Virus record (IMG/VR): IMGVR_UViG_3300049846_000628
Coordinates: 124,001-188,000 of that record
DNA: 64,000 bases
Direction: 5' to 3' (one strand)
Position 1 is the stretch's first letter. The number at the start of each line of letters is the position of its first letter. Position numbers and translations under genes: made by a program. This document shows, piece by piece, positions 3,637 to 61,293 of the stretch. The notes beneath the pieces were generated by a model, which worked only from the letters and a program-made list of their open reading frames with translations, did no database searches and was not told the origin of the DNA.

Positions 3637-3640
3637 TCTA

Positions 3641-5851: not shown

Positions 5852-6043
5852 TCAATACCCCAGCCAGACCAGAAACTCACCAGCGTCAACCCCGCCGAAG
5901 GCAGCGGTCGTTCCGTAGTCGGTGCGGAAGTCATCCCACAGACCGTGGAGTTTGGCAGCGTATGCCGCTTCGATCCAGAAGATGGTCCCGTTGTCGGGGT
6001 TGGTGATGGAGGCGATCTGACTGGGGAAGCAGGGGTCGGTCAT
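5852..6043 (-). CDS. Early small hypothetical protein
   Basis: 63-aa ORF directly behind promoter at 6066-6095. Confidence 0.75.
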   Translation of the reverse strand: MTDPCFPSQIASITNPDNGTIFWIEAAYAAKLHGLWDDFRTDYGTTAAFGGVDAGEFLVWLGY

Positions 6044-6100
6044 CGGGTGCCTTGCGGTTGAGAGAATTCTACAGGGTCAGGGGGCAGGGCGTCAACCTGC

Positions 6101-6265
6101 TCACCAGAGCAGGTCCGCGATTGACTGCAGGCGCTTGGCACGGGTTGCCAGTTCCTTAAGGATGGCCCGCTCCTCCTTGGCAGTGGGGTTGCCTTCCCAC
6201 AACCACTCCTCCAGTTGGAAGGAGGTCATGTCGTCGAAGGCGGTGGCGATGGTTCCGTCCAGCAC
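6101..6265 (-). CDS. Early small hypothetical protein (54 aa, GTG start)
   Basis: Hand-translated MLDGTIATAFDDMTSFQLEEWLW...ADLLW; GGAG RBS; own promoter. Confidence 0.65.
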   Translation of the reverse strand: MLDGTIATAFDDMTSFQLEEWLWEGNPTAKEERAILKELATRAKRLQSIADLLW

Positions 6266-6336
6266 GGTGCGCTCCGTTGGTTTGCTCTGGAATTCTACAG
6301 GGTCGGGGGCGGGAGGTCAACCCACCCCCTGGCGGA

Positions 6337-6561
6337 TCAGACCGCCACCCAGTAGGACTTGCCGTTGATCTCCTGCTGTTCTGCCATAATGTAGGAGGCA
6401 GATCCCATGCTACCGCGCCAACCCTGAACCTGGAAGTAGCACTCCTCCAGGGAGTCCTGATAGGCAAGGGTGCTGGTGATCTTACCATCCTGCACGTGCG
6501 CCACAGCGTAGGGATAGCGTTCGGGGGAGAGGATGGTCAGCAGAGGGGTGGGGGCGGTCAT
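6337..6561 (-). CDS. Early small hypothetical protein
   Basis: Start reassigned to MTAPTP at 6561 behind TGnTACAAT (6591-6599). Confidence 0.7.
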   Translation of the reverse strand: MTAPTPLLTILSPERYPYAVAHVQDGKITSTLAYQDSLEECYFQVQGWRGSMGSASYIMAEQQEINGKSYWVAV

Positions 6562-6601
6562 CGGTCGGGGGTGTCGGTTGAACTGAGAGTATTGTAGCAG
6601 G

Positions 6602-6826
6602 TCAGCGGCGCTCGGCGTTGAAGTCCTGCAGTCCCTTAAGGATGCCCTCCAGGAAGGCGGTGCCGATGCCCTCCCAGAATTTGGGGTCGCGGACCAGTTC
6701 AGCAATGGCAGCGAACCAGTCAGCAGGGGTCGCCGCGGCCAACTGTTCGCGCTCTGCAGGAGTCAGGTCTGCCATCATCTGATTCCAGTCGTTCAGCAGT
6801 TGGGTTTCCAGGTTCGGGCGGGTCAT
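6602..6826 (-). CDS. Early small hypothetical protein
   Basis: 74-aa ORF behind TGnTACAAT (6849-6857). Confidence 0.75.
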   Translation of the reverse strand: MTRPNLETQLLNDWNQMMADLTPAEREQLAAATPADWFAAIAELVRDPKFWEGIGTAFLEGILKGLQDFNAERR

Positions 6827-6872
6827 CGGGTCCGTTGCGGTTGAGAGTATTGTAGCAGATGGGGCGGACCCC

Positions 6873-7058
6873 TCAGATCATCACAGTGGTGGGCAGTGCC
6901 CGAACGATGGGGGAGTGGTGGCGGTAGCAGAACTCCCGCAGATCGTGGATGCTCTCACCAGCGAAGTCATCAGCGGTAAAGGTCCAACCGTGGAACTCAC
7001 GGTCGATCTCAGTCAGGGTGTGAGCGATCAGGGAGCGGAGGTTCTGAGCGGTAGTCAT
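6873..7058 (-). CDS. Early small hypothetical protein
   Basis: 61-aa ORF behind TATACT at 7081-7086. Confidence 0.72.
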   Translation of the reverse strand: MTTAQNLRSLIAHTLTEIDREFHGWTFTADDFAGESIHDLREFCYRHHSPIVRALPTTVMI

Positions 7059-7129
7059 CGGTTTCGTTTGAACTGAGATCAGTATAAGGGGTTGGGGTGG
7101 GGTCTCCGGAGACCCCGTGTGCCAGTGCC

Positions 7130-7318
7130 TCAGGCGTCCATCCCCATCGCATCCCGCAGGATGTTGTAGGCGTTCAGGTAGTAGTCTGCGTCAGCACCCT
7201 TACCAGCGACGCGGCAATCGACTGCCAGGCAGAGCACGGCGGTGCGGATAGTGCTCCACTGTGCCTCAGTCAGGGTGATGGAGCAGAGGTCGTTGGGGAG
7301 GACGTTGGTGCGGGTCAT
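7130..7318 (-). CDS. Early small hypothetical protein
   Basis: 62 aa; own promoter; stop inside palindrome 7118-7141. Confidence 0.75.
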   Translation of the reverse strand: MTRTNVLPNDLCSITLTEAQWSTIRTAVLCLAVDCRVAGKGADADYYLNAYNILRDAMGMDA

Positions 7319-7388
7319 CGGTCGTTTGCTTCGGTTCCCTCAGTATAGAGGCAAAAGGGAGGGGTCGTCCCCCTCCGTTGTGCCACTA

Positions 7389-7523
7389 TCAGAATTGGAT
7401 TTCTTCGGCGGTCGGCTGGGCATCGGGCATGGTATCATCCTCTGCGATCGTTTCCAGGATCTGCAGGATGCTGTCGCCGTTGCTGCCTTGGCGGAGCAGG
7501 GACATGGCAAGGTCGCGGGTCAT
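7389..7523 (-). CDS. Early small hypothetical protein (44 aa)
   Basis: Hand-translated MTRDLAMSLLRQGSNGDSILQILETIAEDD...EIQF. Confidence 0.6.
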   Translation of the reverse strand: MTRDLAMSLLRQGSNGDSILQILETIAEDDTMPDAQPTAEEIQF

Positions 7524-7581
7524 TTGAGAATCAGAGTAAAGGTTGCTGAGCAGTTTAAAGTCGTGCTCAGGACTGATAGAT

Positions 7582-7833
7582 TCAGGAGTCGAAAACGTCG
7601 CCGTTGATCTCAGCGCGGTTGATCTTAGGGTCGTCCCACTTTACACCGTCAGGGGTTTCTTTGCTGCCGCAATCATAGAATGCTTCCAGAAGTTCTTCAT
7701 AGCAGCAGATGTCATTCTCCTGAATGAAGTTGTAGATGCTTTCATCATTCTCAATCCAGAGCACCACGTTCCAGGTCTCATAATTGGTCCAACCGTTGTA
7801 GGTCTTGGTGGGAGCGGTGAGGGTGGCGGTCAT
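7582..7833 (-). CDS. Early hypothetical protein (YNGWTNYETW motif)
   Basis: YNGWTNYETWNV.LWI.NDE motif seen in many phage proteins; own promoter. Confidence 0.82.
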   Translation of the reverse strand: MTATLTAPTKTYNGWTNYETWNVVLWIENDESIYNFIQENDICCYEELLEAFYDCGSKETPDGVKWDDPKINRAEINGDVFDS

Positions 7834-7905
7834 TGGGGTTCGGTTCGGAACTTGTTTAGTATAGGGGGCGGGAGGTGCCCCCTGGTGGGTCAGTGTGCCA
7901 GTGCC

Positions 7906-8106
7906 TCAGGCGGCACAAGCGGCAGGGGTCAGGGTGACTTCTACGCTACCGTCGATCGCCAGCAGCGCCGCGTCGATGGCATCCAGGCGGGCTTCCACAA
8001 TGGAAGGCGTGAAGTGCTCAGGATGCTTCACTGCCAGACTCAGCAGCTCACCCTTCCAGGAGATCAGGGCAGTGCGGACGGTGGCGGTGGGGAGGGTCGC
8101 GGTCAT
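7906..8106 (-). CDS. Early small hypothetical protein
   Basis: 66 aa; own promoter; stop inside palindrome 7894-7917. Confidence 0.72.
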   Translation of the reverse strand: MTATLPTATVRTALISWKGELLSLAVKHPEHFTPSIVEARLDAIDAALLAIDGSVEVTLTPAACAA

Positions 8107-8139
8107 CGGGGTCGTTTGATCTGAGAGTATTCTACAGGG

Positions 8140-8310
8140 TCAGCGGGTCTGCCCGCAGTAGGAAGGGGACACTTTACAGAGTGCCTCTGCCTGCCGCTCC
8201 TGGTGCGCGTTGATGGTAGCGACTGCCTCCAGTGCCCAGGCACCTGCCACAATGCTCACCATGGCGAAGCACATAATGGCGAGAGAGTTCTGAAAGGAAC
8301 GTTCGGTCAT
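8140..8310 (-). CDS. Early small membrane protein (56 aa)
   Basis: Hand-translated MTERSFQNSLAIMCFAMVSIVAGAWALEAV..., one hydrophobic segment; own promoter. Confidence 0.6.
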   Translation of the reverse strand: MTERSFQNSLAIMCFAMVSIVAGAWALEAVATINAHQERQAEALCKVSPSYCGQTR

Positions 8311-8345
8311 CGGTTCGGTTCGGTTGATGGAATCAGTCTACAGGG

Positions 8346-8513
8346 TCAACGGGAGATGAGGTCGCCTGCAGTGTACAGTGCCTCAGCTGTCACACTGCGA
8401 ATCGGTTGCATCGGACCCCAGAACGTGTAGAGCAGGGCACCGCCGATCAGGAGTTTAATCATGGTAGCACGGTGAAACTCAGGAGAGCGGGAGCGGGTCA
8501 GGGAGCGCATCAT
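8346..8513 (-). CDS. Early small membrane protein (55 aa)
   Basis: Hand-translated MMRSLTRSRSPEFHRATMIKLLIGGALLYTFWG...; ATGA overlap with upstream ORF. Confidence 0.55.
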   Translation of the reverse strand: MMRSLTRSRSPEFHRATMIKLLIGGALLYTFWGPMQPIRSVTAEALYTAGDLISR

Positions 8514-8671
8514 CGCTGCAGTTGGGCAAGGGAGGAAGGGGCGATGTGGGAGGGGGAACCACAGGAGCGGTAGAAGTCTACCATGCGGTCTGCTTCCTCT
8601 TTAGTGGTGAACCACTGCGAGCGCCACTCACAGGCATTGTAGGGGGTCTGGTAGCGGACTTCGAAGCGCAT
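8510..8671 (-). CDS. Early small hypothetical protein (53 aa)
   Basis: Hand-translated MRFEVRYQTPYNACEWRSQWFTTKEEADRMVDFYRSCGSP...; own promoter. Confidence 0.7.
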   Translation of the reverse strand: MRFEVRYQTPYNACEWRSQWFTTKEEADRMVDFYRSCGSPSHIAPSSLAQLQR

Positions 8672-8739
8672 CGGTGTCGTTTGCTGATGGAATCAGTATA
8701 AGGGGCGGGAGGTGCCCCCAGAGAGGTTAGGTTGACGGT

Positions 8740-18680: not shown

Positions 18681-18775
18681 TCTTGTCTTAAAAGTCGCAA
18701 TAATATTTATATTAAAAGAGGGACATTTCTGTCCCCCCAACTTTGCTTTTAGATGCGACTCCTAAGCATCAATAT

Positions 18776-34678: not shown

Positions 34679-37600
34679 TCACGCATAACGAATAATGTAT
34701 CCAAGAGCAATATATGGAGGTAGGTTTGCATCAGTTCCAGAAACTCCCTTATCGGCGGTTGTGAAGGTATGTGTATGGTTTTGACTCTCTCCACCAGTTC
34801 CTCCACCGTGAGAGTGGGATCCTGCGTCATTACTTCTACCAGCATCTGGTCCATTTCCTGTACCTTTAAGGGCATATCTATAATCATTATTGTTATTGAG
34901 TATCGCAGTTCTTAATAAGAATGGAACCCCACCATTATCAACTAAATTAGTAAATCTATTTGTATCAGATCTTTCACCACTGTTAACAACAAGGTGGTTA
35001 TGGTTTCCATCTCCACTGATTCCGTGGTTATGTCCTCTATTATTACCATCAGTTGTTCCTGTATGGTTGTGAGAGACAACTACAGCATCCTTTGTACCAC
35101 CCGTTCTAGTTACAGCTCCTGTAACAGTTGTTCCACCGTTTGCACTTGATCCAATAATGAATCTATCAGTTAGATTTGGAAGGTTGAAGGTTGTTGATCC
35201 GTTTCCAGCACCAAAAGTTGTTCCGGTGATTGCAAATAGAGCACTAAATGTAGTTCTAGAAACAGCAGATCCATTACATAGTAACCATCCAGTTGGAACA
35301 CTGGTCACATTTCCAGCCCACATTACAACAGATCCAATTGGTGCAATGCTCTGAGAGAAAATTTGACCAATTGTAGCAATTCCAGAAATTGAAGCATTAT
35401 TTGAAACACTTAGATCTGTTGTAGTAGTAACACCAGTAACAATAGCACCAGTTGATGTTGTTTCAATTTTCTTAGAATTATTATGATAGAGTTCAGAAGA
35501 TCCATCTACACTAAACTTACTTAGTATTTCTCCACCTATTGATTCTAGAGTAATAGAACCACTGGTTGTTCTCAGGGAAAGGTTTCCAACAGCGTTATCA
35601 ACAAAGCTACCAGTACCATTAGTGTAGATTGATAGATTAACACTATCACCAAAGATTATCTTATTAGTTCCTTTGATGTTTACATTATTAAAGGCATTTG
35701 TTCCACCAAAAATATTGATAGAATCTGATGCTGTGTTAGTAAATCTTACTTTTCCACTAAAAGTAGATTGTGCTTTAATTCTAAGATCTTTGTTGAAGGT
35801 TACAGGACCATCAAACTGAGAAAGAACTTGTCCAGAATCACCACCCTCAACAAGAAGTCTTTCCTTAATTGTAACCTCATCATATACTACACTGAGTCTT
35901 GAAGGATCTTCACCAGTGATGGTTGGATTTGGAATATCGTAGGAAACAGTTTCTCCACTTGCTGCAGAAGTTTTTGTATTTCCATTGAATACATCACCAT
36001 CACTATTCATAGCAGTGTAGACAACAACACCACCAGAACGTTCCTGAGATTGTGCTAGGAAGTCCTCTCTTTCGGTGAGAGTCTTGACTTGAATCTGTGG
36101 TAAACCAGTTGAATAGTTACCAGGACCATATCCAAGATATTCAAATGTGTGTCCAGAAGCACGAAGAATAGATGGTCTACGGAATTCAATAGCGACTGGA
36201 TCAATCTTACGAATTAGTGATCCACCATCGTGATTTTCTTGACGTGTACCGAGAGCACCACGAATAACGCTAATCTGAGCAGCATTATCACTGGTCGTCA
36301 CTCTCATAATCTCATTATCAATTTGGATATAAGATCCAAGAGGCAATCTGTTTGATGTAGCACCTACACCAGCAATTGCGAATGTTGACTCAGTTGTAAT
36401 TGAAGCAGAGAGTGTAAATGTTTCACTAGCATAGAATGGAACAGATCTTGTCCCGATATTCTCTCCATTTGCATCAGAAATGCCCTGGTTTGCTGATAAA
36501 CCGTGCTTCAGGATATAACCGTTTGTTGCCGAAATTGATTGGTTGGTTATCGCACTGAATGTGTTTACGCCAACTCTTTCATAGACTAAGTAATCTCCAA
36601 GATTATTATTGCTAGAATCAATGACTCTAAACTGGTTACCAGCAACCAATCCGTGAGCATCTGATGTAGTAAATGTGGAAATTCCTGTTGCTGAACCGTA
36701 AGAAGTTCCAGTAATTAAAACTGAAGGTCCGACTAAGAATCCATACTGACTGCTGAGAATCGTTGGATCTCCAGAAGTCTTAGCAACTGAAATAGTTGTT
36801 GCAGATCCAACTGAAGTGATTCTGTAATATCCGTCAGCGGTTGTTCCAGCACCAGTAAATTGAATTACATCACCAATATTTGTAGAAATACCTGCATTGT
36901 TAATTGCAATAGATGCATCTGCAGTTCCACCAATCTTAGCAGTATCAAAGTACAGAGTCTCTCCGCTTACATATCCAGAACCACCTGCTTGAATATCAAC
37001 ACCAACAACAGATCCACCAGAAACTACAACCTTAGCAGTAGCACCATCCCAGTTTACAAGTCCTGCTTCATTATAAAGTTTAACATTGTAGAACGTTCCA
37101 TTTGTATGTCCAGTTCCACCAGTCAGTGAACTATATGTTGCGATTCCTGCAAGACCGTGATTTCTTCCAAAGGTGATCGTTGCAATTCCACTGTTAGATA
37201 CAACTGAAGATATTGTAAGACCAATACCAATATTCTTCAGCATCAAGTCGGATGCTTCTCTTGTAATACTCTTCTTCAGATCGTTTGTTATAACATCACC
37301 AATTGGAGAACGCTTCGCAAAGGACTTCGCAGCTCTTGGGTTTGCGTCTACATTATCTCTATCCAGCTGAGGATAAAGATCTACAGGTGACTGACTGAAC
37401 TTAAGATTTGTAAATTCTGATGGTATTGCATTGTTTGCATCAAGAACATATAGGTGGTAAATACCATCCTGAACATTATAAACATATGGAGAAATAATCT
37501 CATTTCTATAAACATACAGGTTACCCTGCATATCATTTCTTTCAAATCTTGGTAGATCAATGTCTCTAACATTTACATCACTAGTGAATGTTCCTGGAGT

Positions 37601-40366
37601 ATGTGCAACTCCAAAAACGTCAGTTGTAGAATACTTAAATGTTACATCATCAGAAACAGAAACCTGGAATACACCATTATATCCAAGATTATTCTCACCA
37701 GTTGTATTGGTTGTACTCTTAACACTCTTAATCGCTACAAGATCTCCAGTTTGAAGATTATGTGGGAGTTCAGAAATAACGGTTACTGTATTTGAAGCTA
37801 CAGAGCAAGTGCTAATGAATCTTGGATTCTTATTGTATCCATAATCAGTGGTCGCAATGCTTACTCTTGTGAAATCAGCATTATTTCTAGCACCAGTTGA
37901 ACTTGAAGTTTGAATAATAAATCCAGTCTCAGGATCTTTTGCGTTTACAAGTTCTTTTGGAATTACAACTCTCATCTTGTAGAGTTTTTCATCCAAACTT
38001 CTTTCGTCAGAAATTCTCTTTACATAGATAAGATCTGTTGTAGTTCCATAAGTTTCTGTTCCACCAGACGCAAATGCATTATAAATTTGGTTATTTGCAT
38101 TAGTGTGAATAAACCAGTTTGATCTAACTGGATCATATTGTACTGGTGATCCAATGTCTCCAGATTCTTTATCAGATACTCTGCTTAAAATGCTAAGGCT
38201 GGTTCCACCATAGACTGTAAGAGTCTGATTGGAGATTGAGTTAGTATATGAAGTAGCAAGTTTGATTTCAGTCGCACTAGTACGAACAGCATAATAGATA
38301 CGATGTGGTTCAATATTCTCTGGATAATCTCCATCATCACTTATGAGAATAACTCTTTCTCCAGTCTGAATCTTGTGATTTCCAAGAGTAAAGACACTAG
38401 ATGTTAATGAAGATACTGTGTATGACTTAATAGCACTAATTGTTCCAATCGCTGTTGTAAATCCACTGCTTGCGATAATATTATCGCACATATAGATATC
38501 AGCTGAGAATGTGCTTCCTGCACCAACAAAATATAGTTTATCATTTAATCTAGCACCAATTCTATATCCCTGTGTTTGAGAAGAAGGAGCACTATCTGAT
38601 GCTGTAAATCCAGCTATGTATAAATGACTTGAAATACCGACAGAAGTAGTAAGACCTACATCTAAAGATAACCATTCAATATTATCTTCATTAGTAGTAT
38701 TAACTGCTCTTGGAGGAATAACAGCAGTAATGAAGGCATTATTGTCCTTATCAAATGCCGCCTTTCTAAATCCTACAGAGTTTAGAGATATCTGACCAAA
38801 GTTGGAGTTGGAGTTGGTAATAGAAGCATCTCCACCACTTTCTGCATCAAAGTGTTTTGTAAATCCAATTGCAAACACCGAAACAATCTGAATGAATGCA
38901 TCATTACTGATCTTAATATGACTTGTTTCCCATCCAGATCTATAAACTGCATCTGGATCTAAGTGATAGACTTGATTTGAGTCTGTCTGTGAAGCACCTT
39001 CCGTAAGAGTGGATCCATAAACAGGAGTGATTGGGTTTACACCCTGATAAGTTCTAGATGTCTTGTTATATTTTACAAACGCACGGTCGTCTTTTTGTAG
39101 TGAAACAGCAGTAAACTGTGCAACAACGGTACTTCTAAATCCAGATGCTTTACTACCATCGGCGTGAAGACCGTTCATACCCCAAACGGAGCGCATAGAA
39201 ATATTGAAAATGTATGGCGATGCGCCAGACACTGTATCAGTTTCAATTGTTACTGTCGCAGATGCAGCACTTGGGCTTGGATTGATATTTGGATAAGATG
39301 CTAATCCAGGCAGCAAGTAGGTAAATGATGTATCGCTAAGTACATTCTGAACCTTTGTTGAAATATTATATGGTGCTGTTACACCAGATCCACTAACTCC
39401 TCTGATCTTAATTGGAGTTCCTGCATTTAATCCGTGATTTGCTGAAGTTGTTACCGTTACAACTGCACTTGCAGTGCTTCCATTTCCAGAAATGATGGAA
39501 GAAATTGTAATAGGATCTGGAGCAAAAGCACCAACAATTTCCCATTCTGAACGTTGCTTTGCAAATCCTTCCCCATCAACAGGGAACTTCTGGTCTATAT
39601 CACGAATCGCATTATATGCGTTAGAGACCTTGCTATAGTACATATCAAGATCAGTAATTCCATAATTACCAATCTTGTTTACACCATCACAGAATTCAAA
39701 ACAAGTGAGTTTGTGGTGTGAGAATGATGGAATTGATTGATATGTAGTTCCGAAGTTATCAGGGTTTGTATAAACAAGACCATTATCATCACCATCAAAA
39801 ATTGAGAACTGCCAGAAATAGCAAGCACCAGTAATTCTGAAGATAGCAGACTTGCTAACAGAAGAATCTGTTGGATTTGGTACGTACTTTGGTCTGATTT
39901 TTGTCTTACGAAGGTCAAGACCAACAATAGAAGTTCCTCTTGGAACTACAACACCACCATAATAACTGTTAAACTTATAAAGAATATTGTCTTCTTGTGT
40001 TAGGTCAAAAACAGAATCAAGACCTAACGATAATACTGAGGATGCTAAAACACCAGCGCCGCCTGCTCTGGAAACTGCATAAGCAGATCCACCATTATCA
40101 TAGATCGCAAATCCAGGTCTATTATCAACTAAGTGCTCTCCAGGGAATAACAGAATTGTAGTTTTTTCTACTAAATCGTTATTATCACCCTTAACGTAAG
40201 AGAACCTCGCTGCTTCTATAAGAGCTCTCTGAATCGTTTTGAACGGACGGGCAAGGGAATTTCCCTGATTTGTAATTGAGTCGGTAGCATCTAGATCATT
40301 GGGATTTACATATAGAATGCGACCCTCAGTGTTCTTAATAAAATTATCTAATTTGTTTAATGGCAA
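34679..40366 (-). CDS. Large virion structural/fibre protein with tail-collar domain (TTG start)
   Basis: 1895 aa; PIGSVVMWAG..PTGWLLCNG..FNLPNL collar motif, HxH repeats, NLPPYIALGYIIR end. Confidence 0.85.
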   Translation of the reverse strand: MPLNKLDNFIKNTEGRILYVNPNDLDATDSITNQGNSLARPFKTIQRALIEAARFSYVKGDNNDLVEKTTILLFPGEHLVDNRPGFAIYDNGGSAYAVSRAGGAGVLASSVLSLGLDSVFDLTQEDNILYKFNSYYGGVVVPRGTSIVGLDLRKTKIRPKYVPNPTDSSVSKSAIFRITGACYFWQFSIFDGDDNGLVYTNPDNFGTTYQSIPSFSHHKLTCFEFCDGVNKIGNYGITDLDMYYSKVSNAYNAIRDIDQKFPVDGEGFAKQRSEWEIVGAFAPDPITISSIISGNGSTASAVVTVTTSANHGLNAGTPIKIRGVSGSGVTAPYNISTKVQNVLSDTSFTYLLPGLASYPNINPSPSAASATVTIETDTVSGASPYIFNISMRSVWGMNGLHADGSKASGFRSTVVAQFTAVSLQKDDRAFVKYNKTSRTYQGVNPITPVYGSTLTEGASQTDSNQVYHLDPDAVYRSGWETSHIKISNDAFIQIVSVFAIGFTKHFDAESGGDASITNSNSNFGQISLNSVGFRKAAFDKDNNAFITAVIPPRAVNTTNEDNIEWLSLDVGLTTSVGISSHLYIAGFTASDSAPSSQTQGYRIGARLNDKLYFVGAGSTFSADIYMCDNIIASSGFTTAIGTISAIKSYTVSSLTSSVFTLGNHKIQTGERVILISDDGDYPENIEPHRIYYAVRTSATEIKLATSYTNSISNQTLTVYGGTSLSILSRVSDKESGDIGSPVQYDPVRSNWFIHTNANNQIYNAFASGGTETYGTTTDLIYVKRISDERSLDEKLYKMRVVIPKELVNAKDPETGFIIQTSSSTGARNNADFTRVSIATTDYGYNKNPRFISTCSVASNTVTVISELPHNLQTGDLVAIKSVKSTTNTTGENNLGYNGVFQVSVSDDVTFKYSTTDVFGVAHTPGTFTSDVNVRDIDLPRFERNDMQGNLYVYRNEIISPYVYNVQDGIYHLYVLDANNAIPSEFTNLKFSQSPVDLYPQLDRDNVDANPRAAKSFAKRSPIGDVITNDLKKSITREASDLMLKNIGIGLTISSVVSNSGIATITFGRNHGLAGIATYSSLTGGTGHTNGTFYNVKLYNEAGLVNWDGATAKVVVSGGSVVGVDIQAGGSGYVSGETLYFDTAKIGGTADASIAINNAGISTNIGDVIQFTGAGTTADGYYRITSVGSATTISVAKTSGDPTILSSQYGFLVGPSVLITGTSYGSATGISTFTTSDAHGLVAGNQFRVIDSSNNNLGDYLVYERVGVNTFSAITNQSISATNGYILKHGLSANQGISDANGENIGTRSVPFYASETFTLSASITTESTFAIAGVGATSNRLPLGSYIQIDNEIMRVTTSDNAAQISVIRGALGTRQENHDGGSLIRKIDPVAIEFRRPSILRASGHTFEYLGYGPGNYSTGLPQIQVKTLTEREDFLAQSQERSGGVVVYTAMNSDGDVFNGNTKTSAASGETVSYDIPNPTITGEDPSRLSVVYDEVTIKERLLVEGGDSGQVLSQFDGPVTFNKDLRIKAQSTFSGKVRFTNTASDSINIFGGTNAFNNVNIKGTNKIIFGDSVNLSIYTNGTGSFVDNAVGNLSLRTTSGSITLESIGGEILSKFSVDGSSELYHNNSKKIETTSTGAIVTGVTTTTDLSVSNNASISGIATIGQIFSQSIAPIGSVVMWAGNVTSVPTGWLLCNGSAVSRTTFSALFAITGTTFGAGNGSTTFNLPNLTDRFIIGSSANGGTTVTGAVTRTGGTKDAVVVSHNHTGTTDGNNRGHNHGISGDGNHNHLVVNSGERSDTNRFTNLVDNGGVPFLLRTAILNNNNDYRYALKGTGNGPDAGRSNDAGSHSHGGGTGGESQNHTHTFTTADKGVSGTDANLPPYIALGYIIRYA

Positions 40367-40928: not shown

Positions 40929-41021
40929 TCTGCTTTAATCGTGGTTATGAATATTTATATGAGAAAAGGAGCATTTCTGCTCCTACTCTTTGCTTAAACA
41001 ACCACGATTAAGCACTAATAT

Positions 41022-41324: not shown

Positions 41325-41357
41325 AGGGATTTTCCCATATCTCTTATTTATTTTAAG

Positions 41358-41439
41358 TAGGGCGAGCGGGACTTGAACCCGCAAGGCTTGCGCCACCGGT
41401 TTTTAAGACCGGAATGTTTACCGATTTCATCACCGCCCC
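41358..41439 (-). tRNA. tRNA-Leu(TAA)
   Basis: GGGGCGG/TCGCCCT acceptor, CCGGT-CTTAAAA-ACCGG anticodon arm, long V arm, GCGGG-TTCAAGT-CCCGC. Confidence 0.95.
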
Positions 41440-41452
41440 GTGATGTGAGACC

Positions 41453-41481
41453 ATTATAACTCTTTGAGTCTGAATGGTCAA
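41453..41481 (-). promoter_or_regulatory. Sigma70 promoter for tRNA-Leu
   Basis: TTGACC-N17-TATAAT. Confidence 0.8.
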
Positions 41482-41482
41482 G

Positions 41483-41555
41483 TGCTCCTTGCGTGGATCG
41501 AACACGCCTCAGGCGAATTATGAGTTCGCTGCATTCACCAGATTGCTAAAGGAGC
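41483..41555 (-). tRNA. tRNA with CAT anticodon (elongator Met or Ile2)
   Basis: GCTCCTT/AAGGAGC acceptor, GCGAA-CTCATAA-TTCGC, GCGTG-TTCGATC-CACGC. Confidence 0.93.
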
Positions 41556-41559
41556 AAGG

Positions 41560-41647
41560 TACGAGTGCCTGGATTCGAACCAGGTCAAAGCCGCTAATCT
41601 GGCGGAAAGAGTTTATAAGACTCCTCTGACTACCAAGTCTCACTCGC
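41560..41647 (-). tRNA. Non-canonical tRNA-Ile(TAT) with long variable arm
   Basis: GCGAGTG/CACTCGT acceptor, GGAGT-CTTATAA-ACTCT, CCGC/GCGG V arm, CCTGG-TTCGAAT-CCAGG. Confidence 0.85.
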
Positions 41648-52407: not shown

Positions 52408-52842
52408 ATGGCTTCTTACAAAGGAAAATATAAACCATCTTACCCACAAAAATATAAAGGAGATCCAACAAACATTGTATACAGATCTTTGTGGGAAAGA
52501 AAATTTATGGTTTATTGTGATACGAATCAAAAAATATTAGAATGGGGTAGTGAAGAGATGTATGTCTGGTATAAATCCCCCATTGATGGAAAACCTCATC
52601 GTTATTTTCCAGATTTCTACATTAAAGTCCAAGAAGGAAATGGAAGTATAAAAAAATATTTAATTGAAATCAAACCTCAGAAGCAAACTGTCCCCCCACC
52701 CAAACCACAAAGACAAACTAAAAGATACATTAGTGAAGTCTATGAGTATGCTAAAAACCAATCAAAATGGGAAGCTGCAAGAGAATGGTGTGCTGATCGT
52801 GGATATGAATTTAAAGTAATTACTGAGAATGAATTATTTTAA
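52408..52842 (+). CDS. gp4: Head completion nuclease gp4
   Basis: KYKGDPTNIVYRSLWERKFM, HRYFPDF, IEIKP, NQSKWEAA. Confidence 0.93.
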   Translation: MASYKGKYKPSYPQKYKGDPTNIVYRSLWERKFMVYCDTNQKILEWGSEEMYVWYKSPIDGKPHRYFPDFYIKVQEGNGSIKKYLIEIKPQKQTVPPPKPQRQTKRYISEVYEYAKNQSKWEAAREWCADRGYEFKVITENELF

Positions 52843-52876
52843 TTATAAATAATAGTATATTATTAAAATATAAAAA

Positions 52877-53536
52877 ATGAGTGAATATTATACATATGCC
52901 TATTTGCAAAATAATGGGTTTCCATATTATATTGGAAAAGGCAAAGGAAATAGATTATATGATCATAGAGGTAAAAATTGCAATCCACCAAAAGATAAAA
53001 GTAGAATAATAAAATTAAAACAAAATATAACTGAAGAAGAAGCGTTTAAGCACGAAATTTATATGATTGCTTTATTTGGAAAAAAATGTGATAATACAGG
53101 CATTTTAATGAATATTGCAGATGGTGGAAATGCTCCTCCAACATACTATGGAGAAGATAGTCCAACAAAAAGGTCTGAAGTTAGAGCAAAAATTGGTGCT
53201 GCAAATAAAGTAAGTTTGAAGGGAAGAAAAATTCCAGAAGAGGTAAGAAAAAAGCAATCAAATACTTGGAAAGAGAAATTAAAAAATAATCCAAGACCAA
53301 TATCATATTATACTGAAAATTTAAAAAAAATGGCAGAAAGAAATCGTAATGATAAAAAAAAGCATAGAAAACATAGTGAAATGATGAAAGGCAGACCAAG
53401 TGCCAATAGAAAACCTGTCATTTATGATAGAAAAATATATGCATCTATGACTGAAGCCATAGAAAAGACAAAACTATCTCGTTATCTTATCTTAAAAAAT
53501 GGTGGAATGTTCCTTAATAAAGAAGATATCAAATAA
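52877..53536 (+). CDS. GIY-YIG homing endonuclease
   Basis: YYTYAYLQNNGFPYYIGKG..EAFKHEIYMI..GILMN. Confidence 0.88.
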   Translation: MSEYYTYAYLQNNGFPYYIGKGKGNRLYDHRGKNCNPPKDKSRIIKLKQNITEEEAFKHEIYMIALFGKKCDNTGILMNIADGGNAPPTYYGEDSPTKRSEVRAKIGAANKVSLKGRKIPEEVRKKQSNTWKEKLKNNPRPISYYTENLKKMAERNRNDKKKHRKHSEMMKGRPSANRKPVIYDRKIYASMTEAIEKTKLSRYLILKNGGMFLNKEDIK

Positions 53537-55613: not shown

Positions 55614-56189
55614 ATTTAAGTTCTTATCAAAGATCATTACATATCGGTGCTTGCGGGAGCGTTCTTTCCACTCTCCTTCAGCACCTTTTACTTTTCCGCG
55701 AGAGTGTTTAGTTCCGTCTGCAAAGTAGAAATCTTTTTTTGGATCTGTGAGACCTGCATACTTAAAGTTACAAGCCCGATAGATTGTACCACTATGCAAA
55801 CTGCTATCAGCATAAGATATAATTGCTGATACTTTTGTGTCCTTCCGAAACTGTTTAATCGCTTTTGCAACGAACCAAGAAGTAATGTTGTACTCTTGTG
55901 ACTGGACATCTGGATGGATACAAAGTCTGGAGAGTTCAAAGAGTCCTTGTTGTTCATTTCTTTCTAACCCAAACGCTCCTTGTGCTATTTCTGGAACAGG
56001 GAGTCCAGTAAAAATACAAACTCCCTGGATACCACCTATATTTAACGGACAGAACTCATTTTTCTTGAAAAGACCGTAGTTATATCCTGATTTAAAATCT
56101 TTTGAAATATCTTTGAGATAATGAAACCGCAGAAGTAACTCTGCGGCTTCGGATTTACTTACACGGTCAATGTAGTAATCGGATTTCAC
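55599..56189 (-). CDS. Mom-like GNAT DNA modification protein
   Basis: HYL, FELSRLC, ISYADS..H.GTIYRACNFKY.G. Confidence 0.8.
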   Translation of the reverse strand: MKSDYYIDRVSKSEAAELLLRFHYLKDISKDFKSGYNYGLFKKNEFCPLNIGGIQGVCIFTGLPVPEIAQGAFGLERNEQQGLFELSRLCIHPDVQSQEYNITSWFVAKAIKQFRKDTKVSAIISYADSSLHSGTIYRACNFKYAGLTDPKKDFYFADGTKHSRGKVKGAEGEWKERSRKHRYVMIFDKNLNLKWV

Positions 56190-57109
56190 TCCTCAGCAAG
56201 ACGTGCGAAATAACTGAGTGCATCATCATCTTCATCCTCTTCTACTGCCGCAGCACGGCGGGTAGGTTGAAGATTGTTGAGTTCAGTGCGAAGATCTTCA
56301 TCAAGATCTTTCACAGGACCACGGGTGTTATCCTCATCAAACTCTTCAGGATCCTGATAACGGGGAGTACCTTTATTACCCAGCACATAGTCCAGACGCT
56401 TTTTCAGTTCATCATAAGATTTGAACTGATCAGCAGCAATATGCTCAGCAAGAGAATATTGCTTACGCCATACTGCTTCCAGAGCCTCATCATCGTCTAG
56501 AAGAGGAGAAGGATTAGCAAACTCACTGGAATCATAGTTACGATAACCAGCAACGTTCTTCGCCTTCAGTTTGAAGTTAGCACCCTTCCAGAAGTCAAAG
56601 GGATCAATTGCTTCCTCATCTTCAAACTCAGGTTGCATTGCAGCAGTGAGTTTATCAAAGATCTTCTTACCATACTTGAACAGGAAGACCTTACCTTCGT
56701 TTGCAGGATTAGCAGGATCCTTCACCACATAGATGTTGGACACATAGGTGAGTTTACGCTTCTGCTTACGGGCAAGTTCTTTACCAGCATCAGTACCGTT
56801 GTTCCACAGTTCGGAGTTCAGTTCCGACACGGGATCCTTCTGACCCAGAGTAGTCAGAGAATTCTCAATATACCAACCACCAGGACCTTGGAATGCGTGA
56901 CTGTAGAGTTTCACGAAGGGCAGGTCTTCACCTTCGGGAGCGGGAAGGAAACGGATAACGGCATAACCATTGCCGCTTTTATCTACATCCAGTTTCCACA
57001 GACGGTCATCACTAGAACCGCTGTTAGTATTCATTTTTTCAACTTCCTTGACCAGTTTGGCGGTCAGGGAACCAAGTTTAGACTGTTTCTTAAGATCGGC
57101 AAAGCCCAT
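56186..57109 (-). CDS. gp32: Single-stranded DNA-binding protein gp32
   Basis: DDRLWK..DKSGNGYAVIRFLP, GWYIENSLTT, GANFKLK, acidic tail. Confidence 0.96.
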   Translation of the reverse strand: MGFADLKKQSKLGSLTAKLVKEVEKMNTNSGSSDDRLWKLDVDKSGNGYAVIRFLPAPEGEDLPFVKLYSHAFQGPGGWYIENSLTTLGQKDPVSELNSELWNNGTDAGKELARKQKRKLTYVSNIYVVKDPANPANEGKVFLFKYGKKIFDKLTAAMQPEFEDEEAIDPFDFWKGANFKLKAKNVAGYRNYDSSEFANPSPLLDDDEALEAVWRKQYSLAEHIAADQFKSYDELKKRLDYVLGNKGTPRYQDPEEFDEDNTRGPVKDLDEDLRTELNNLQPTRRAAAVEEDEDDDALSYFARLAEE

Positions 57110-57151: not shown

Positions 57152-57180
57152 AGTATAACAGGGTTTCTCTCAGCGGTCAA
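57152..57180 (-). promoter_or_regulatory. Sigma70 promoter of gp32
   Basis: TTGACC-N17-TATACT with extended -10 TG. Confidence 0.8.
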
Positions 57181-57502
57181 TGTATTGCTTGAGAGATTCA
57201 ATCGTCTTGTTCATACTACTGAATAAAACTTGCATATCAGTCTCTGGTGGGAAACCCATCAGGGCAACTGACTTGCGTAGGTTCTCTTTCATTTCAACCG
57301 CTTGAGGGTCGTCTGAAAGGGATAACCTAGTATACATCACTCTCTGCTTTTCTAGCAAGAGCTCAAGTTTCTCAATGTGTTTCAATTTGGTCTCACGGGG
57401 CATTCCACCGAAAGTTAAAATACTTCCGTAGATTTCTTCTTGTAACTTATTAATTTCTTTCAGTTCTTCCTGAATGATATCTGAGTCAAAAAAGTTACTC
57501 AT
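57170..57502 (-). CDS. DUF1825-like conserved protein
   Basis: FFDSDIIQEEL..LLEKQRVMYTRLSLSDDP.A. Confidence 0.75.
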   Translation of the reverse strand: MSNFFDSDIIQEELKEINKLQEEIYGSILTFGGMPRETKLKHIEKLELLLEKQRVMYTRLSLSDDPQAVEMKENLRKSVALMGFPPETDMQVLFSSMNKTIESLKQYIDR

Positions 57503-57554
57503 CTATGATTTCCCGTAAAATTTTCTTATAATTGAACACATCAATATTTAGAAA
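57495..57554 (-). pseudogene. Orphaned original 3' end of gp59
   Basis: Encodes FLNIDVFNYKKILREIIDE*, matching the current gp59 end FIQVDISSYKKILKEIIL* at 10 of 18 positions. Confidence 0.8.
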
Positions 57555-57853
57555 CTGTTTTTTATCCTTTGTTTTCTTTCTCTTGCCCGTTTTTTACGGG
57601 TTTCCCTATCTTTATTATTTTCCCAATACCTCTTTTTTTCTCTAGCCCGTCTAGCTAAAACTTGTTCTTCAGTTAATCCCTTTGCCCACCTTTTCTTTTC
57701 ATAATCTGGATTTTTTTCTCTCCATTTTTGACGAGATTGTTCTCTTTGAACTTCTCTAGATGGAAATTTTTCAGAATCTGTAATTGATATGTCTTCTATA
57801 AAGTCAGGACCATCAATATTAAGGGCACGGTTAATACCTGATACATTTAACAT
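57548..57853 (-). CDS. Basic protein carried by an inserted element
   Basis: 101 aa, Arg/Lys-rich, no nuclease motif, own TATAAATA promoter. Confidence 0.7.
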   Translation of the reverse strand: MLNVSGINRALNIDGPDFIEDISITDSEKFPSREVQREQSRQKWREKNPDYEKKRWAKGLTEEQVLARRAREKKRYWENNKDRETRKKRARERKQRIKNSF

Positions 57854-57941
57854 ATTCTTTTAGTAGGGGTAATACTATTTATATTGTAAAGGCGGGACTT
57901 ACACAAGTCAAATACCCCTACCCGACTTTGCTGCCCGCCAA

Positions 57942-58538
57942 TTATAAAATTATTTCTTTGAGTATTTTTTTATAACTAGAAATATCTACTTGAATGAAAG
58001 GAGAATACTTCTTAATCTTTAAGGAAACACACTCCCACACTGGGTCCAAAAGTTTCTTATCAAAATCTACGGAGAAACGGAATATTTTTTCGTAGATTGT
58101 TAAAGTTTCTAGCGATAACTGCCCGCTTAGAAACTTTTTGAGGACTATTGGATGCCCCTTTGAACAATTCAAAGCATCCTCTAATTTTGTCCCCAAGAAC
58201 AATTCGCTGCTTTGTTCTTTGAATAAGTAACTCAAACTCTGTTGTCTTCGCATCCACTCTGAGTATGTTCTTTCTCCAGAATTGATAATTTCTCCAATCC
58301 ATAAGTTCTGTGGGTTATCTGCTGATACAAAGTTTGATACTAGAAAATCTATAATTTCTTTATCTGAAAATTTGCGACTTGTGCGTTCGAAAAAATATTT
58401 ATCTTTGCGTCGATTAAACGAAGTCATACTCGCACGAGTCTTCGCACCATACTTAAAGAAGTCGTATTTGGGGTTTGTGAAATGATTTTTTAAAGACAAA
58501 TAATGTTGATAGGTTTCAAAGGGTGTCACTTTCAGCAT
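57942..58538 (-). CDS. gp59: Helicase loader gp59
   Basis: YLSLKNHF..YDFFKYG, SF..RKDKYFFE, HPIVLK..SLETL. Confidence 0.9.
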   Translation of the reverse strand: MLKVTPFETYQHYLSLKNHFTNPKYDFFKYGAKTRASMTSFNRRKDKYFFERTSRKFSDKEIIDFLVSNFVSADNPQNLWIGEIINSGERTYSEWMRRQQSLSYLFKEQSSELFLGTKLEDALNCSKGHPIVLKKFLSGQLSLETLTIYEKIFRFSVDFDKKLLDPVWECVSLKIKKYSPFIQVDISSYKKILKEIIL

Positions 58539-60405: not shown

Positions 60406-61005
60406 TTAGAGTTTTTGATGATTTGCTATTTTTAAAATATGGTTCATAAATGAAGAAACATTCATATCACTTTTCATATAGTTACATTTAGTACAACAGG
60501 GGACACAATTTTCTTTTTCATATCCTCTCATACTATCTATTCGGTCAATTCCATTGTAAGGAACAGGAACACCTACATATTTCCCCCTACCTCTGTGAGG
60601 TTGCTTTAACTCTGGTTCTGAACCACAATAATAACAATTTCGTTTAATAATTTCAAGATATTCTTCTTTTGATAAATCAAAATTTATATTTCTAGTTTTT
60701 GCTCCAGATTGATATTGTTCGTAAATGTATCTATAGACACTTTCTGGTTTTCTTCTTTTTTGAGCATTAAAGTTGTTTCTGTAAGTATGTTTGCAACCAC
60801 AACTTTTTGCTCTGTCTAGTTCATTTTTACACACAAAACTATCATATCTAAAAACTTTTTCTGTTCCACAAACACATCTACACAAAAGTTTTTTTCTTTT
60901 TCTGCCATTTGAATAAGTTTCATAAAAAGGATTAGATATAACTTCAAGATGATAAAATTTATCGCCCACCTTTATCTCAGGGTGTTTTTTATATTCTCTA
61001 GTCAT
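60406..61005 (-). CDS. HNH-type homing endonuclease
   Basis: C.CVCG, KSCGC, CYYCG, NGIDRIDS..GY..NCVPCCTKCNYMK. Confidence 0.85.
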   Translation of the reverse strand: MTREYKKHPEIKVGDKFYHLEVISNPFYETYSNGRKRKKLLCRCVCGTEKVFRYDSFVCKNELDRAKSCGCKHTYRNNFNAQKRRKPESVYRYIYEQYQSGAKTRNINFDLSKEEYLEIIKRNCYYCGSEPELKQPHRGRGKYVGVPVPYNGIDRIDSMRGYEKENCVPCCTKCNYMKSDMNVSSFMNHILKIANHQKL

Positions 61006-61053
61006 ATTATAAACCAGGTTGGAATGTTTAAATTATTTATATTATAACCTGGT

Positions 61054-61293
61054 TTATAATTTTTTTACTGTTGATCCTGGAGCTCTGCTGGCTTTTTCAA
61101 GGACAGTGTTCCAGGAAGGATGTTTGGAGGTGAGTTTATTCCTCCAATCACCCACTTCACCAACATTCATTTGTGTTGGAATAAGTGGTTTAAGGTGAGG
61201 ATTTTCTTTAAGATATGGTTCCTTTTCTGCCATAAGCATCCATTTTTCAAAGATTTCACCAGTTTCTGTATTTTCAAATCTATAGGTCGGCAT
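61054..61293 (-). CDS. FmdB-like conserved protein
   Basis: MPTYRFENTETGE N-terminus; usual position between thyX and phoH. Confidence 0.65.
   Translation of the reverse strand: MPTYRFENTETGEIFEKWMLMAEKEPYLKENPHLKPLIPTQMNVGEVGDWRNKLTSKHPSWNTVLEKASRAPGSTVKKL

What the first reader, a model, noticed from the sequence alone, without database searches (positions are those of the whole stretch)
57854..57941. Third lock-and-key leader with a different scaffold
Seen (minus strand): GGCGGG...CCCGCC-UUU outer stem enclosing GCAAAG and an AAGUC/GACUU hairpin whose loop GUAGGGGUA is complementary to UACCCCUAC in the leader after TATAAATA. GCAAAG is shared with the two GIY-YIG modules although the ORF is unrelated. 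Inference: the RNA module is a portable family and GCAAAG may be a protein or processing site.
Basis: partly seen in the sequence, partly recalled or inferred. Interest (0 to 1): 0.62.

Follow-up and report, generated by a model that had tools for sequence, protein, structure and literature searches.

The report
Portable lock-and-key leader of cyanophage homing genes
The 88-base gap between two genes of this T4-like cyanophage holds a conserved, portable control cassette (a hairpin, two overlapping promoters and a short leader complementary to the hairpin's loop). It most likely lets a homing-endonuclease-type gene be translated only from its own transcripts, which is a variant of a trick already known from phage T4.

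Summary
On the minus strand, between gp59 and a 101-aa ORF, there is a two-tier hairpin: an outer GGCGGG/CCCGCC stem and an inner stem that contains GCAAAG. Its loop carries GUAGGGGUA, which is perfectly complementary to UACCCCUAC just after a TATAAATA late promoter.

The window comes from a 211-kb T4-like cyanomyovirus. In that genome, 7 of 28 TATAAATA sites are flanked by complements of 9 nt or more (3% at random positions), and six of the seven, plus a 7-nt homologue, precede homing-endonuclease-type genes.

The same cassette occurs in over 55 metagenomic viral contigs, in front of at least six unrelated ORF families and behind at least six different upstream genes.

- **Stems:** both stems covary.
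- **Lock and key:** these never vary within this type. A second type with the same topology has different, compensating lock and key sequences.
- **GCAAAG:** this is only the 5' strand of the inner stem. It changes with compensating changes opposite, and sharing it with the GIY-YIG modules is within chance (13-27%).
- **The ORF:** it is derived from a homing endonuclease, not unrelated.

The best reading is the known T4 principle (I-TevI, segB, mobE, e, soc): read-through transcripts are translationally locked and own-promoter transcripts are open. What is new is a loop-displayed lock and overlapping sigma70-like and late promoters. The function is inferred, not shown.

The parts
57934..57939 (-). 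Outer stem, 5' strand (GGCGGG); begins 2 nt after the gp59 stop codon (57944-57942)
   Evidence: Sequence. 4 of its 6 pairs show changes on both sides across 32 distinct homologues.
57924..57931 (-).
   Evidence: 100% of cells are paired. 2 pairs change on both sides and 3 on one side. Variants are GUAAAGUU and UCAAUC, each with compensating partners.
57910..57923 (-). Apical loop, 14 nt; the lock GUAGGGGUA is 57921-57913
   Evidence: Invariant in all 32 distinct sequences. A loop-agnostic pattern found no other loop in IMG/VR. It is complementary to the key.
57902..57909 (-). Inner stem, 3' strand (GACUUGUG); as DNA it overlaps the sigma70-like -35 hexamer TTGACT (57911-57906)
57891..57896 (-). 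Outer stem, 3' strand (CCCGCC), followed by UUU (57890-57888)
   Evidence: The U-run is missing in the commonest IMG/VR variant (13 loci), and the tool scored no terminator here.
57883..57911 (-). Sigma70-like promoter TTGACT-N17-TACAAT (10 of 12 consensus positions)
   Evidence: The homologues L070, L071, L082, L083 and L090 have TTGACT-N17-TATAAT (read).
57876..57883 (-). T4-type late promoter TATAAATA; overlaps the -10 hexamer by one base
   Evidence: It is CATAAATA or CCTAAATA in homologues. The cyanophage late consensus is NATAAATA (PMC2984593).
57863..57871 (-). Key UACCCCUAC; starts 5 nt after the late promoter (about the expected late start site) and ends 9 nt before the AUG
   Evidence: Of 33 distinct upstream sequences found through the key alone, 28 carry the lock.
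57854..57862 (-). A-rich spacer UAAAAGAAU before the start codon; no clear Shine-Dalgarno sequence
   Evidence: Conserved with the key in all homologues.
57548..57853 (-). ORF101: a nuclease-less, homing-endonuclease-derived small basic protein
   Evidence: No Pfam or PHROG hit. It has 8 metagenomic homologues, all between gp59 and DUF1825. Its C-terminus equals that of the GIY-YIG-like P0009. Its N-terminus matches small NUMOD3 proteins.
57942..58538 (-). Upstream gene gp59 (helicase loader), the source of read-through transcripts
   Evidence: Pfam T4_Gp59_N and phrog_269.

Best explanation
The interval is a self-contained, portable expression cassette for homing-endonuclease-type genes of T4-like cyanophages. 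It has three parts: (1) a two-tier hairpin that starts right after the upstream gene's stop codon and displays a 9-nt 'lock' in its apical loop; (2) two overlapping promoters, one sigma70-like (its -35 lies in the hairpin's 3' strand) and one T4-type late TATAAATA; (3) a leader of about 25 nt whose first 9 nt, the 'key', are complementary to the lock.

Transcripts that start at the cassette's own promoters lack the lock and have an unstructured leader, so the ORF is translated. Transcripts that read through from gp59 carry both lock and key. The two pair, either as a loop-to-leader pseudoknot or as a plain helix when the outer stem is opened, for example by a ribosome terminating 2 nt upstream. 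This buries the leader just 5' of the start codon and keeps the ORF silent while downstream genes (DUF1825, gp32) can still be expressed.

Shown: the sequence anatomy, covariation of both stems, conservation and portability, and enrichment of such complements at late promoters. Inferred: the transcription start sites, that lock and key pair in vivo, and that pairing lowers translation.
For: - **Anatomy.** All elements are present.
- **Genome-wide enrichment.** 7 of 28 TATAAATA sites have flanking complements of 9 nt or more, against 3.2% at random positions. The key usually starts 4-5 nt after the promoter. Six of these seven genes, and that of the homologous 7-nt module B, are homing-endonuclease-type: ORFs A, B and 52877 match phrog_314, 60409-61005 is HNH/EndoVII-like, g35515 is homologous to P0009, and the other own-genome ORFs carry GIY-YIG motifs. 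The seventh is ORF101.
- **Stems.** On 32 distinct homologues, 98% of cells pair, 6 pairs change on both sides, and 0 of 500 shuffles reach the observed covariation.
- **Lock and key in homologues.** They are retained in all homologues. A second type with the same topology has GGUCUGUGGUUA/UAACCACAGACC (L010) and GGUUUGUGGUUAU/AUAACCACAAACC (L011), a compensatory C-G to U-A change.
- **Other modules.** Type-2 modules in this genome and its relatives have entirely different lock/key pairs in the same layout.
- **Energetics.** Own-promoter transcripts are nearly unstructured (-2.1 and -2.4 kcal/mol). With the first 19 nt blocked, as by a ribosome at the gp59 stop, the minimum-energy fold becomes a 10-bp lock:key helix (-21.1 kcal/mol, against -9.7 if that pairing is forbidden).
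- **Precedent.** The same logic is shown or proposed for T4 I-TevI, I-TevII, I-TevIII and segB, Aeh1 mobE, and T4 e, soc and others (PMC2988022; PMC3014915). Hairpins containing TATAAATA were noted before endonuclease genes in marine metagenomes (PMC2677866).
Against: - The lock:key helix is not in the unconstrained minimum-energy fold. The hairpin state is -25.8 kcal/mol and the nested lock:key state -22.9.
- As a pseudoknot it is only about isoenergetic by my rough estimate: opening +6.5 and duplex -14.4, plus a generic pseudoknot penalty recalled from the literature.
- The key ends 9 nt before the AUG and covers neither a Shine-Dalgarno sequence nor the start codon, so occlusion would be indirect.
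- Within this module type the lock:key pairs never vary, so there is no direct covariation for that helix.
- In 'solo' copies (L114, L116, L124) the key lies 27 nt (its end) before the next start codon, yet lock and key are kept.
- No transcript data could be obtained.
Confidence: 0.6

Rival explanations
1. The hairpin is only a terminator or 3'-end stabiliser for gp59 mRNA, followed by a promoter. On this view the loop-leader complementarity has no RNA function of its own; it is either a chance match or a DNA-level inverted repeat.
For: The stem is followed by UUU in the window. The hairpin dominates the unconstrained fold. L010 and L011 have long stems followed by a good U-run.
Against: - The tool scored no terminator here.
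- The commonest variant, in 13 loci, has lost the U-run but keeps hairpin, lock and key.
- Complements flanking late promoters are about 8-fold enriched genome-wide.
- Lock and key change together between L010 and L011.
- The loop is more conserved than the stems (P about 0.007).
Confidence: 0.1
2. The lock:key pairing builds a processing site, for RNase E in the AU-rich promoter segment held between helices or for RNase III on stacked helices. The cut would separate gp59 mRNA from the downstream message or set mRNA half-life, rather than gate translation.
For: In T4 the region upstream of gene 32 is processed (a paper on it is cited in PMC2988022), and an RNase E site in gene 32 mRNA is discussed in PMC3014915. 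L010 and L011 have stems of 17-20 bp. The key ends 9 nt from the AUG, which is poor geometry for direct occlusion.
Against: There is no sequence signature of a cleavage site. The module sits in at least six contexts unrelated to gene 32. The 9-10 bp helix is short for RNase III. Nothing here tests cleavage.
Confidence: 0.15
3. The invariant loop (with or without GCAAAG) is a binding site for a phage protein, such as a translational repressor, gp32, or the endonuclease acting as an autorepressor. The complementarity to the leader would be secondary.
For: The 14-nt loop and the UAAG internal loop are invariant, including bases outside the lock. I-TevI autorepresses at an operator that overlaps its late promoter (PMC2988022).
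Against: - The same loop precedes at least six unrelated ORF families, so it cannot be specific to one endonuclease.
- GCAAAG varies with compensation.
- Other module types have unrelated loops but keep the complementarity.
- No protein evidence exists.
Confidence: 0.1

Closest known systems
T4-family 'late promoter inside a hairpin' translational control (I-TevI, I-TevII, I-TevIII, segB, Aeh1 mobE; also T4 e, soc, 49)
   Same: A late promoter lies between two complementary segments. Promoter-proximal transcripts lack the 5' segment. The regulated genes are homing endonucleases or late genes carried on longer early or middle transcripts (PMC2988022; PMC3014915).
   Different: - The 5' segment is displayed in the apical loop of a separate two-tier hairpin, so pairing is a pseudoknot or an alternative fold, not a simple stem.
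- The 3' segment stops 9 nt short of the AUG and covers no Shine-Dalgarno sequence.
- A sigma70-like promoter overlaps the late one.
- The cassette is nearly identical in sequence in front of many unrelated genes.
seg43(25) hairpin of Aeromonas phage 25
   Same: [quoted passage not shown]
   Different: That one is a plain hairpin and its regulatory effect is untested. No loop-leader complementarity is described for it.
Hairpins with TATAAATA before endonuclease genes in 'fractured gene' loci of marine metagenomes (Dassa et al. 2009)
   Same: These are environmental, phage-like endonuclease genes. In 15 of 16 cases the 5' UTR held a hairpin, and 10 of the hairpins included TATAAATA, with two conserved motifs that complement each other (PMC2677866).
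   Different: They are described as simple hairpins. I could not compare sequences because no supplement is held. Neither a loop-displayed lock nor a sigma70-like promoter is described.
T4/T2 gene 32 leader pseudoknot
   Same: A pseudoknot followed by an unstructured A/U-rich leader in the gene 59-32 region of a T4-like phage (PMC3014915).
   Different: That pseudoknot lies at the 5' end of gene 32 mRNA and is bound by gp32. Here the pseudoknot could form only on read-through RNA, two genes upstream of gp32, and the module also occurs in contexts unrelated to gene 32.

Membership tests
T4-type promoter-in-hairpin translational gate | A late promoter (TATAAATA) lies between the two complementary RNA segments | tested here: met
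   Lock 57921-57913, promoter 57883-57876, key 57871-57863.
T4-type promoter-in-hairpin translational gate | The 3' segment sequesters the Shine-Dalgarno sequence and/or the start codon | tested here: not met
   The key ends 9 nt before the AUG, and the spacer UAAAAGAAU has no clear SD. In L010 and L011 the key ends 4 nt before the AUG. In the simple-hairpin modules of the same genome it abuts the AUG.
T4-type promoter-in-hairpin translational gate | Promoter-proximal transcripts lack the 5' segment and are unstructured | tested here: inconclusive
   The geometry and folds fit (-2.1 and -2.4 kcal/mol). The start sites are inferred from promoter consensus only, because RNA data were unobtainable.
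T4-type promoter-in-hairpin translational gate | The regulated gene is a homing endonuclease or late gene lying on longer upstream transcripts | tested here: met
   ORF101 is endonuclease-derived. The same cassette precedes NUMOD3, GIY-YIG-like and HNH genes. It is co-oriented with gp59 and starts 2 nt after gp59's stop codon. Read-through itself was not measured.
T4-type promoter-in-hairpin translational gate | Translation is repressed on long transcripts and relieved on short ones | not testable with these tools
   This needs reporter, toeprint or ribosome-profiling experiments.
Intrinsic (Rho-independent) terminator | A compact G+C-rich stem-loop followed directly by a run of U | tested here: not met
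   There were 0 terminator-like sites in 57500-58300. The loop region is 36 nt and only UUU follows. The U-run is absent in the 13-locus variant.
Any curated Rfam family | A covariance-model match at or near the gathering score | tested here: not met
   No relevant hit at E up to 5 in 57400-58400. Only tRNAs were found in the whole window at gathering threshold.
H-type pseudoknot | Hairpin-loop bases pair with a segment outside the hairpin, and the pairing is energetically and sterically feasible | tested here: inconclusive
   The 9-bp complementarity is present and conserved. Duplex energy is -14.4 against an opening cost of +6.5 kcal/mol. No pseudoknot-capable folding program was available. 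The 12-13 bp helices of L010 and L011 from a 16-18 nt loop look sterically strained.
Same RNA family as the two GIY-YIG modules A and B of the window | Alignable sequence and structure | tested here: inconclusive
   A covariance model of the C type scores 120 bits on itself. Modules B and A are the next best hits but weak (24.6 bits, E 0.037; 21.6 bits, E 0.16). Only the outer stem, U-run, promoter and leader align, and the whole inner stem-loop is deleted. The layout is shared but the lock is placed differently.

The most novel reading that the evidence does not exclude
The cassette is a ribosome-sensitive RNA switch, and all these cyanophage endonuclease leaders share one design rule: the anti-leader 'lock' is always displayed in a hairpin loop. 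The closing stems come in four unrelated sequence classes, and 7 of 11 credible type-2 modules have a closing stem of 6 bp or more against 10% in controls.

On read-through mRNA, a ribosome terminating on the upstream gene opens the outer stem. The pre-organised loop then captures the nascent leader faster than a 30S subunit can. Translation of the upstream gene is thereby coupled to silencing of the endonuclease gene.

The whole unit (insulating hairpin, early and late promoters, leader) would move as a plug-in regulatory cassette and be swapped among unrelated mobile genes.
Probability: 0.25. Interest if true: 0.65.

Novelty: new variant of a known kind. Interest (0 to 1): 0.5.

Why it matters
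Free-standing homing endonuclease genes must fit into tightly packed phage operons without disturbing their neighbours. T4 taught that they do this with hairpins that hide the ribosome site on long transcripts. This locus shows that freshwater and estuarine T4-like cyanophages use a standardised, nearly sequence-invariant cassette for the same purpose, reused in front of many unrelated mobile genes and at many genomic sites. The cassette has a different RNA topology (a lock shown in a loop) and combined early and late promoters.

If the mechanism holds, three things follow:
- It gives a compact, portable 'express only from my own promoter' part.
- It gives a marker for finding mobile genes and their remnants in cyanophage genomes.
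- It offers a case for studying how regulatory cassettes and coding modules recombine.

It does not overturn any current view.

Tried and rejected
- **GenBank phages.** ORF101 by tblastn found no match. The 151-nt leader by blastn found only chance hits of 24-41 nt. The cassette is therefore absent from 50,697 deposited phage records; the window's own genome may be hidden from that search.
- **Known families.** Rfam has no family for it. Profiles of ORF101 and of the small NUMOD3 family found nothing among PDB sequences. Pfam and PHROGs found nothing for ORF101.
- **Metagenome scan.** It added almost nothing new.
- **Literature.** A search for the lock and key strings returned only unrelated primers. 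The supplement of Dassa et al. is not held.
- **Loop-agnostic pattern.** A pattern search meant to find other locks on the same stems found none, so lock:key covariation within the type could not be obtained.
- **GCAAAG as a site.** Rejected.
- **gp32-type autoregulatory pseudoknot.** Considered and set aside, because the module sits in many contexts unrelated to gene 32 and its promoters lie downstream of the lock.
- The analysis was redone from references.
- **Not attempted.** No structure or complex prediction was run, because neither would bear on the RNA claim.

Full report
**Setting.** The window is bases 124001-188000 of a single 211,201-bp contig with 37.7% G+C. Its closest deposited relative is Synechococcus phage S-SRM01, a T4-like cyanomyovirus, at about 79% nucleotide identity over conserved genes. 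The finding lies on the minus strand in the 88-nt gap between gp59, the helicase loader (57942-58538; Pfam T4_Gp59_N, phrog_269), and a 101-aa ORF (57548-57853). DUF1825 (57170-57502) and gp32 (56186-57109) follow. In S-SRM01, gp59 and DUF1825 overlap, so the cassette plus ORF101 is an extra segment here.

**Observation.** The sequence is exactly as described; coordinates are given under 'parts'. The lock GUAGGGGUA and the key UACCCCUAC are perfect 9-nt complements and each occurs once in the genome. Such a complement across a promoter-sized gap is found at 3.2% of random positions. It is found at 7 of the genome's 28 TATAAATA sites (P about 2e-5), and an eighth homologous module has 7 nt. In most of these modules the key begins 4-5 nt after the promoter. 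That is about where T4-type late transcripts start, since the TATA box sits about one helical turn upstream of the start (PMC2988020). The genes behind six of the seven sites, and behind the homologous module B, are homing-endonuclease-type; the seventh is ORF101. ORFs A, B and the plus-strand ORF at 52877 match phrog_314 'homing endonuclease', and 60409-61005 is HNH/endonuclease VII-like. The ORFs outside the window begin with GIY-YIG-type motifs.

**What the hairpin is.** ORF101 has eight metagenomic homologues at 66-92% identity, all lying between gp59 and DUF1825. Pattern searches of IMG/VR with the lock side, with the key side, and with a loop-agnostic stem pattern recovered over 55 loci carrying the same core. 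I aligned 32 distinct sequences (A2) and counted pairs:

| Helix | Result |
|---|---|
| Outer stem | 4 of 6 pairs change on both sides (GGCGGG/CCCGCC, AUGGGG/CCCCAU, UGGGGG/CCCCCA, UGCGGG/CCCGCA and others) |
| Inner stem | 100% of cells paired; 2 pairs change on both sides, 3 on one side |
| Whole structure | 98.1% of cells paired; covariation 0.107 against 0.065 in shuffles (0 of 500 reach it); 0.004-0.013 when partners are slid |

The two-tier hairpin is therefore real.

**GCAAAG.** It is the 5' strand of the inner stem. In L119 and L123 it reads GUAAAG with a compensating G>A opposite. In L112 the whole inner stem is UCAAUC/GAUUGA. In the GIY-YIG modules A and B, GCAAAG lies after the lock: its GC closes a small GCUUA/UAAGC stem around the lock, and AAAG is a linker. 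Homologous modules in the same genome (genome positions 8679 and 35515) have CAGGUG there instead. Sharing a 6-mer of this kind happens in 13% of shuffles and 27% of random genomic 62-mers. GCAAAG is therefore not a site in its own right.

**Lock and key.** Within this module type, 8 of the 9 lock:key pairs never vary, so that helix has no internal covariation. Part of this invariance follows from how the loci were found. However, the loop-agnostic search found no alternative loop, and the 14-nt loop is more conserved than the stems (P about 0.007).

Support for the pairing comes from elsewhere. More distant ORF101 homologues (L010, L011/L012) and an unrelated ORF (L053, L060) sit behind a second cassette with the same topology: an outer stem, an inner stem, a 16-18 nt loop, a promoter and a leader. 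Its lock and key are unrelated in sequence to those here (GGUCUGUGGUUA/UAACCACAGACC), and they differ between L010 and L011 by a compensatory C-G to U-A change. Ten or so type-2 modules have their own lock/key pairs.

**Promoters.** Besides TATAAATA, the tool finds TTGACT-N17-TACAAT (10 of 12). Its -35 hexamer is the 3' strand of the inner stem. Several homologues have TTGACT-N17-TATAAT fused to ATAAATA. L010 and L011 have TTGACC-N17-TATACT and TTGACC-N17-TATAAT in that place and no TATAAATA, plus a further TTGACT-N17-TATCCT upstream of the hairpin (read). Overlapping early and late promoters have been proposed for cyanomyoviruses and RB49 (PMC2984593; PMC5931967). The constant feature is thus 'own promoter between lock and key', not lateness.

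**Portability.** The same cassette precedes many different genes:
- ORF101-like genes;
- small proteins with the ORF101-type N-terminus plus NUMOD3;
- MYYTYAYLRED-type, MTLCIYTYK-type and MNNYTYYSYEEYGRGY-type GIY-YIG-like genes;
- HNH_3+NUMOD4 genes;
- in L114, L116 and L124, DUF1825 directly.

It follows at least six different upstream genes. The junction with the ORF is exact at the AUG. The 'solo' copies join the leader to the short segment that follows ORF101's stop codon in the window.

A covariance model of the cassette (R1) scores 120 bits on the locus. Its next-best hits, both weak, are modules B and A. In those alignments the outer stem is matched to their tetraloop terminator hairpin and the inner stem-loop is deleted. 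In type-2 modules the lock also sits in the loop of a small hairpin. The closing stems fall into unrelated sequence classes (ACCUG/CAGGU with wobble variants, UGCUUA/UAAGCA, CUCUAA/UUAGAG). Seven of 11 credible modules have a closing stem of 6 bp or more, against 10% of controls, although these modules are related by descent.

**The ORF.** Residues about 30-101 of ORF101 align at 62-66% identity with the C-terminus of P0009 (177 aa), which sits at the same locus in relatives. P0009's N-terminal domain is homologous to this genome's own GIY-YIG-like endonuclease at genome position 35515 (E 1.6e-40). The first 24 residues of ORF101 match the N-terminus of small NUMOD3 proteins that also sit behind this cassette. 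ORF101 thus looks like a nuclease-less derivative of a homing endonuclease. Its own function is unknown, with no Pfam, PHROG or PDB match.

**Mechanism.** The arrangement matches the established T4 principle. Early and middle read-through transcripts fold so that the initiation region is hidden. Transcripts from a promoter placed inside the structure lack its 5' half and are translated. This is shown for I-TevI and gene e and proposed for I-TevII, I-TevIII, segB and mobE (PMC2988022; PMC3014915).

Folding gives a mixed picture:

| RNA | Result |
|---|---|
| Free read-through RNA | Hairpin state -25.8 kcal/mol; nested lock:key state -22.9 |
| Loop-to-leader pseudoknot | Duplex -14.4; cost of opening the G·U-rich top of the inner stem +6.5 |
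| L010 | Hairpin so stable (-44.2 against -34.3 for the nested state) that only a loop-leader interaction is possible; 12-13 bp from a 16-18 nt loop looks strained |
| Window RNA with the first 19 nt blocked, as by a ribosome terminating at the gp59 stop 2 nt before the stem | Best fold becomes a 10-bp lock:key helix: -21.1, against -9.7 if that pairing is forbidden |
| Own-promoter transcripts | Essentially unstructured: -2.1 and -2.4 |

With a generic pseudoknot penalty recalled from the literature, the pseudoknot state comes out about neutral, so the energetics permit it but do not demand it.

The key stops 9 nt before the AUG and there is no clear Shine-Dalgarno sequence. Any block would act on the upstream part of the ribosome's landing site, as may also be the case for the seg43(25) hairpin. 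I therefore hold the gating model at about 0.6. The main alternatives are processing-site formation, protein binding to the invariant loop, and terminator-only function.

**Verdict.** The GCAAAG site idea and the 'unrelated ORF' statement are not supported. The kind of control is known from T4. The new points are:
- the loop-displayed lock (pseudoknot or switch topology);
- the fused sigma70-like and late promoters;
- the near-invariant cassette reused across many mobile genes and sites in uncultured cyanophages;
- its absence from deposited phage records and from Rfam.

Function remains untested, and no RNA data could be obtained.

Noticed in passing
window 61006-61060 (minus strand): A classical simple-hairpin module. 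15-nt perfect arms flank TATAAATA (61041-61034), and the 3' arm abuts the AUG of an HNH/endonuclease VII-like ORF (60406-61005).
   Followed up: partly
window 40935-41011 and 18693-18760 (minus strand): The two GIY-YIG modules, A and B. The lock sits in the loop of a small GCUUA/UAAGC hairpin, then comes a GAAA-tetraloop terminator, TATAAATA and the key. Terminator stems and lock/key differ between A and B in a compensating way.
   Followed up: partly
window 52408-53536 (plus strand): A plus-strand islet in a minus-strand genome. It holds a TnsA-like endonuclease N-terminal domain ORF (52408-52842, E 4e-24), then TATAAATA with 9-nt AT-rich arms and a homing endonuclease ORF (52877-53536). GC and AT skew flip at 52-54 kb.
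   Followed up: no
window about 6000-8700: G+C is 0.51-0.59, against about 0.37 elsewhere. There are only short ORFs (122 aa or less on the coding strand), no Pfam hits for two tested, and only patchy similarity to hypothetical genes of other Synechococcus phages.
   Followed up: partly
window 41357-41647 (minus strand): A tRNA cluster (Leu-UAA, Met-CAU, Ile-UAU) beside module A. The 90-nt Ile-UAU call by ARAGORN is not confirmed by Rfam at gathering score.
   Followed up: no
L114:3897-3992, L116:1235-1330, L124:6169-6264: 'Solo' cassettes. Hairpin, promoter and key are intact but joined directly to the segment before DUF1825, with no ORF101. This marks exact insertion or deletion of the ORF at the AUG.
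   Followed up: partly
L010:1558-1697, L011:52-194, L053 (around 5013-5140): A second loop-lock cassette type. It has a 17-20 bp stem, a 16-18 nt loop, and two sigma70-like promoters: one upstream of the hairpin, so that its transcript would start at the hairpin, and one between lock and key. It has no TATAAATA and precedes two different ORFs.
   Followed up: partly
L001 (S-SRM01, NC_070963) just upstream of gp030, locus about 3610-3700, minus strand: The published S-SRM01 genome carries an unannotated type-2 module before its 'HNH endonuclease/NUMOD3' gene. The lock is CGGGUGAC in an ACCUG/CAGGU-closed loop, followed by a terminator, TATAAATA and the key.
   Followed up: no
L002-L009 (e.g. 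L002:2465-2562): One ORF101 lineage has an extra C in the key (five C instead of four). This leaves 7 contiguous pairs or a bulged helix, a natural partial 'unlock' variant.
   Followed up: no
window 34679-40366 (minus strand): A 1895-aa ORF lies immediately downstream of the module-A endonuclease gene. It was not examined.
   Followed up: no
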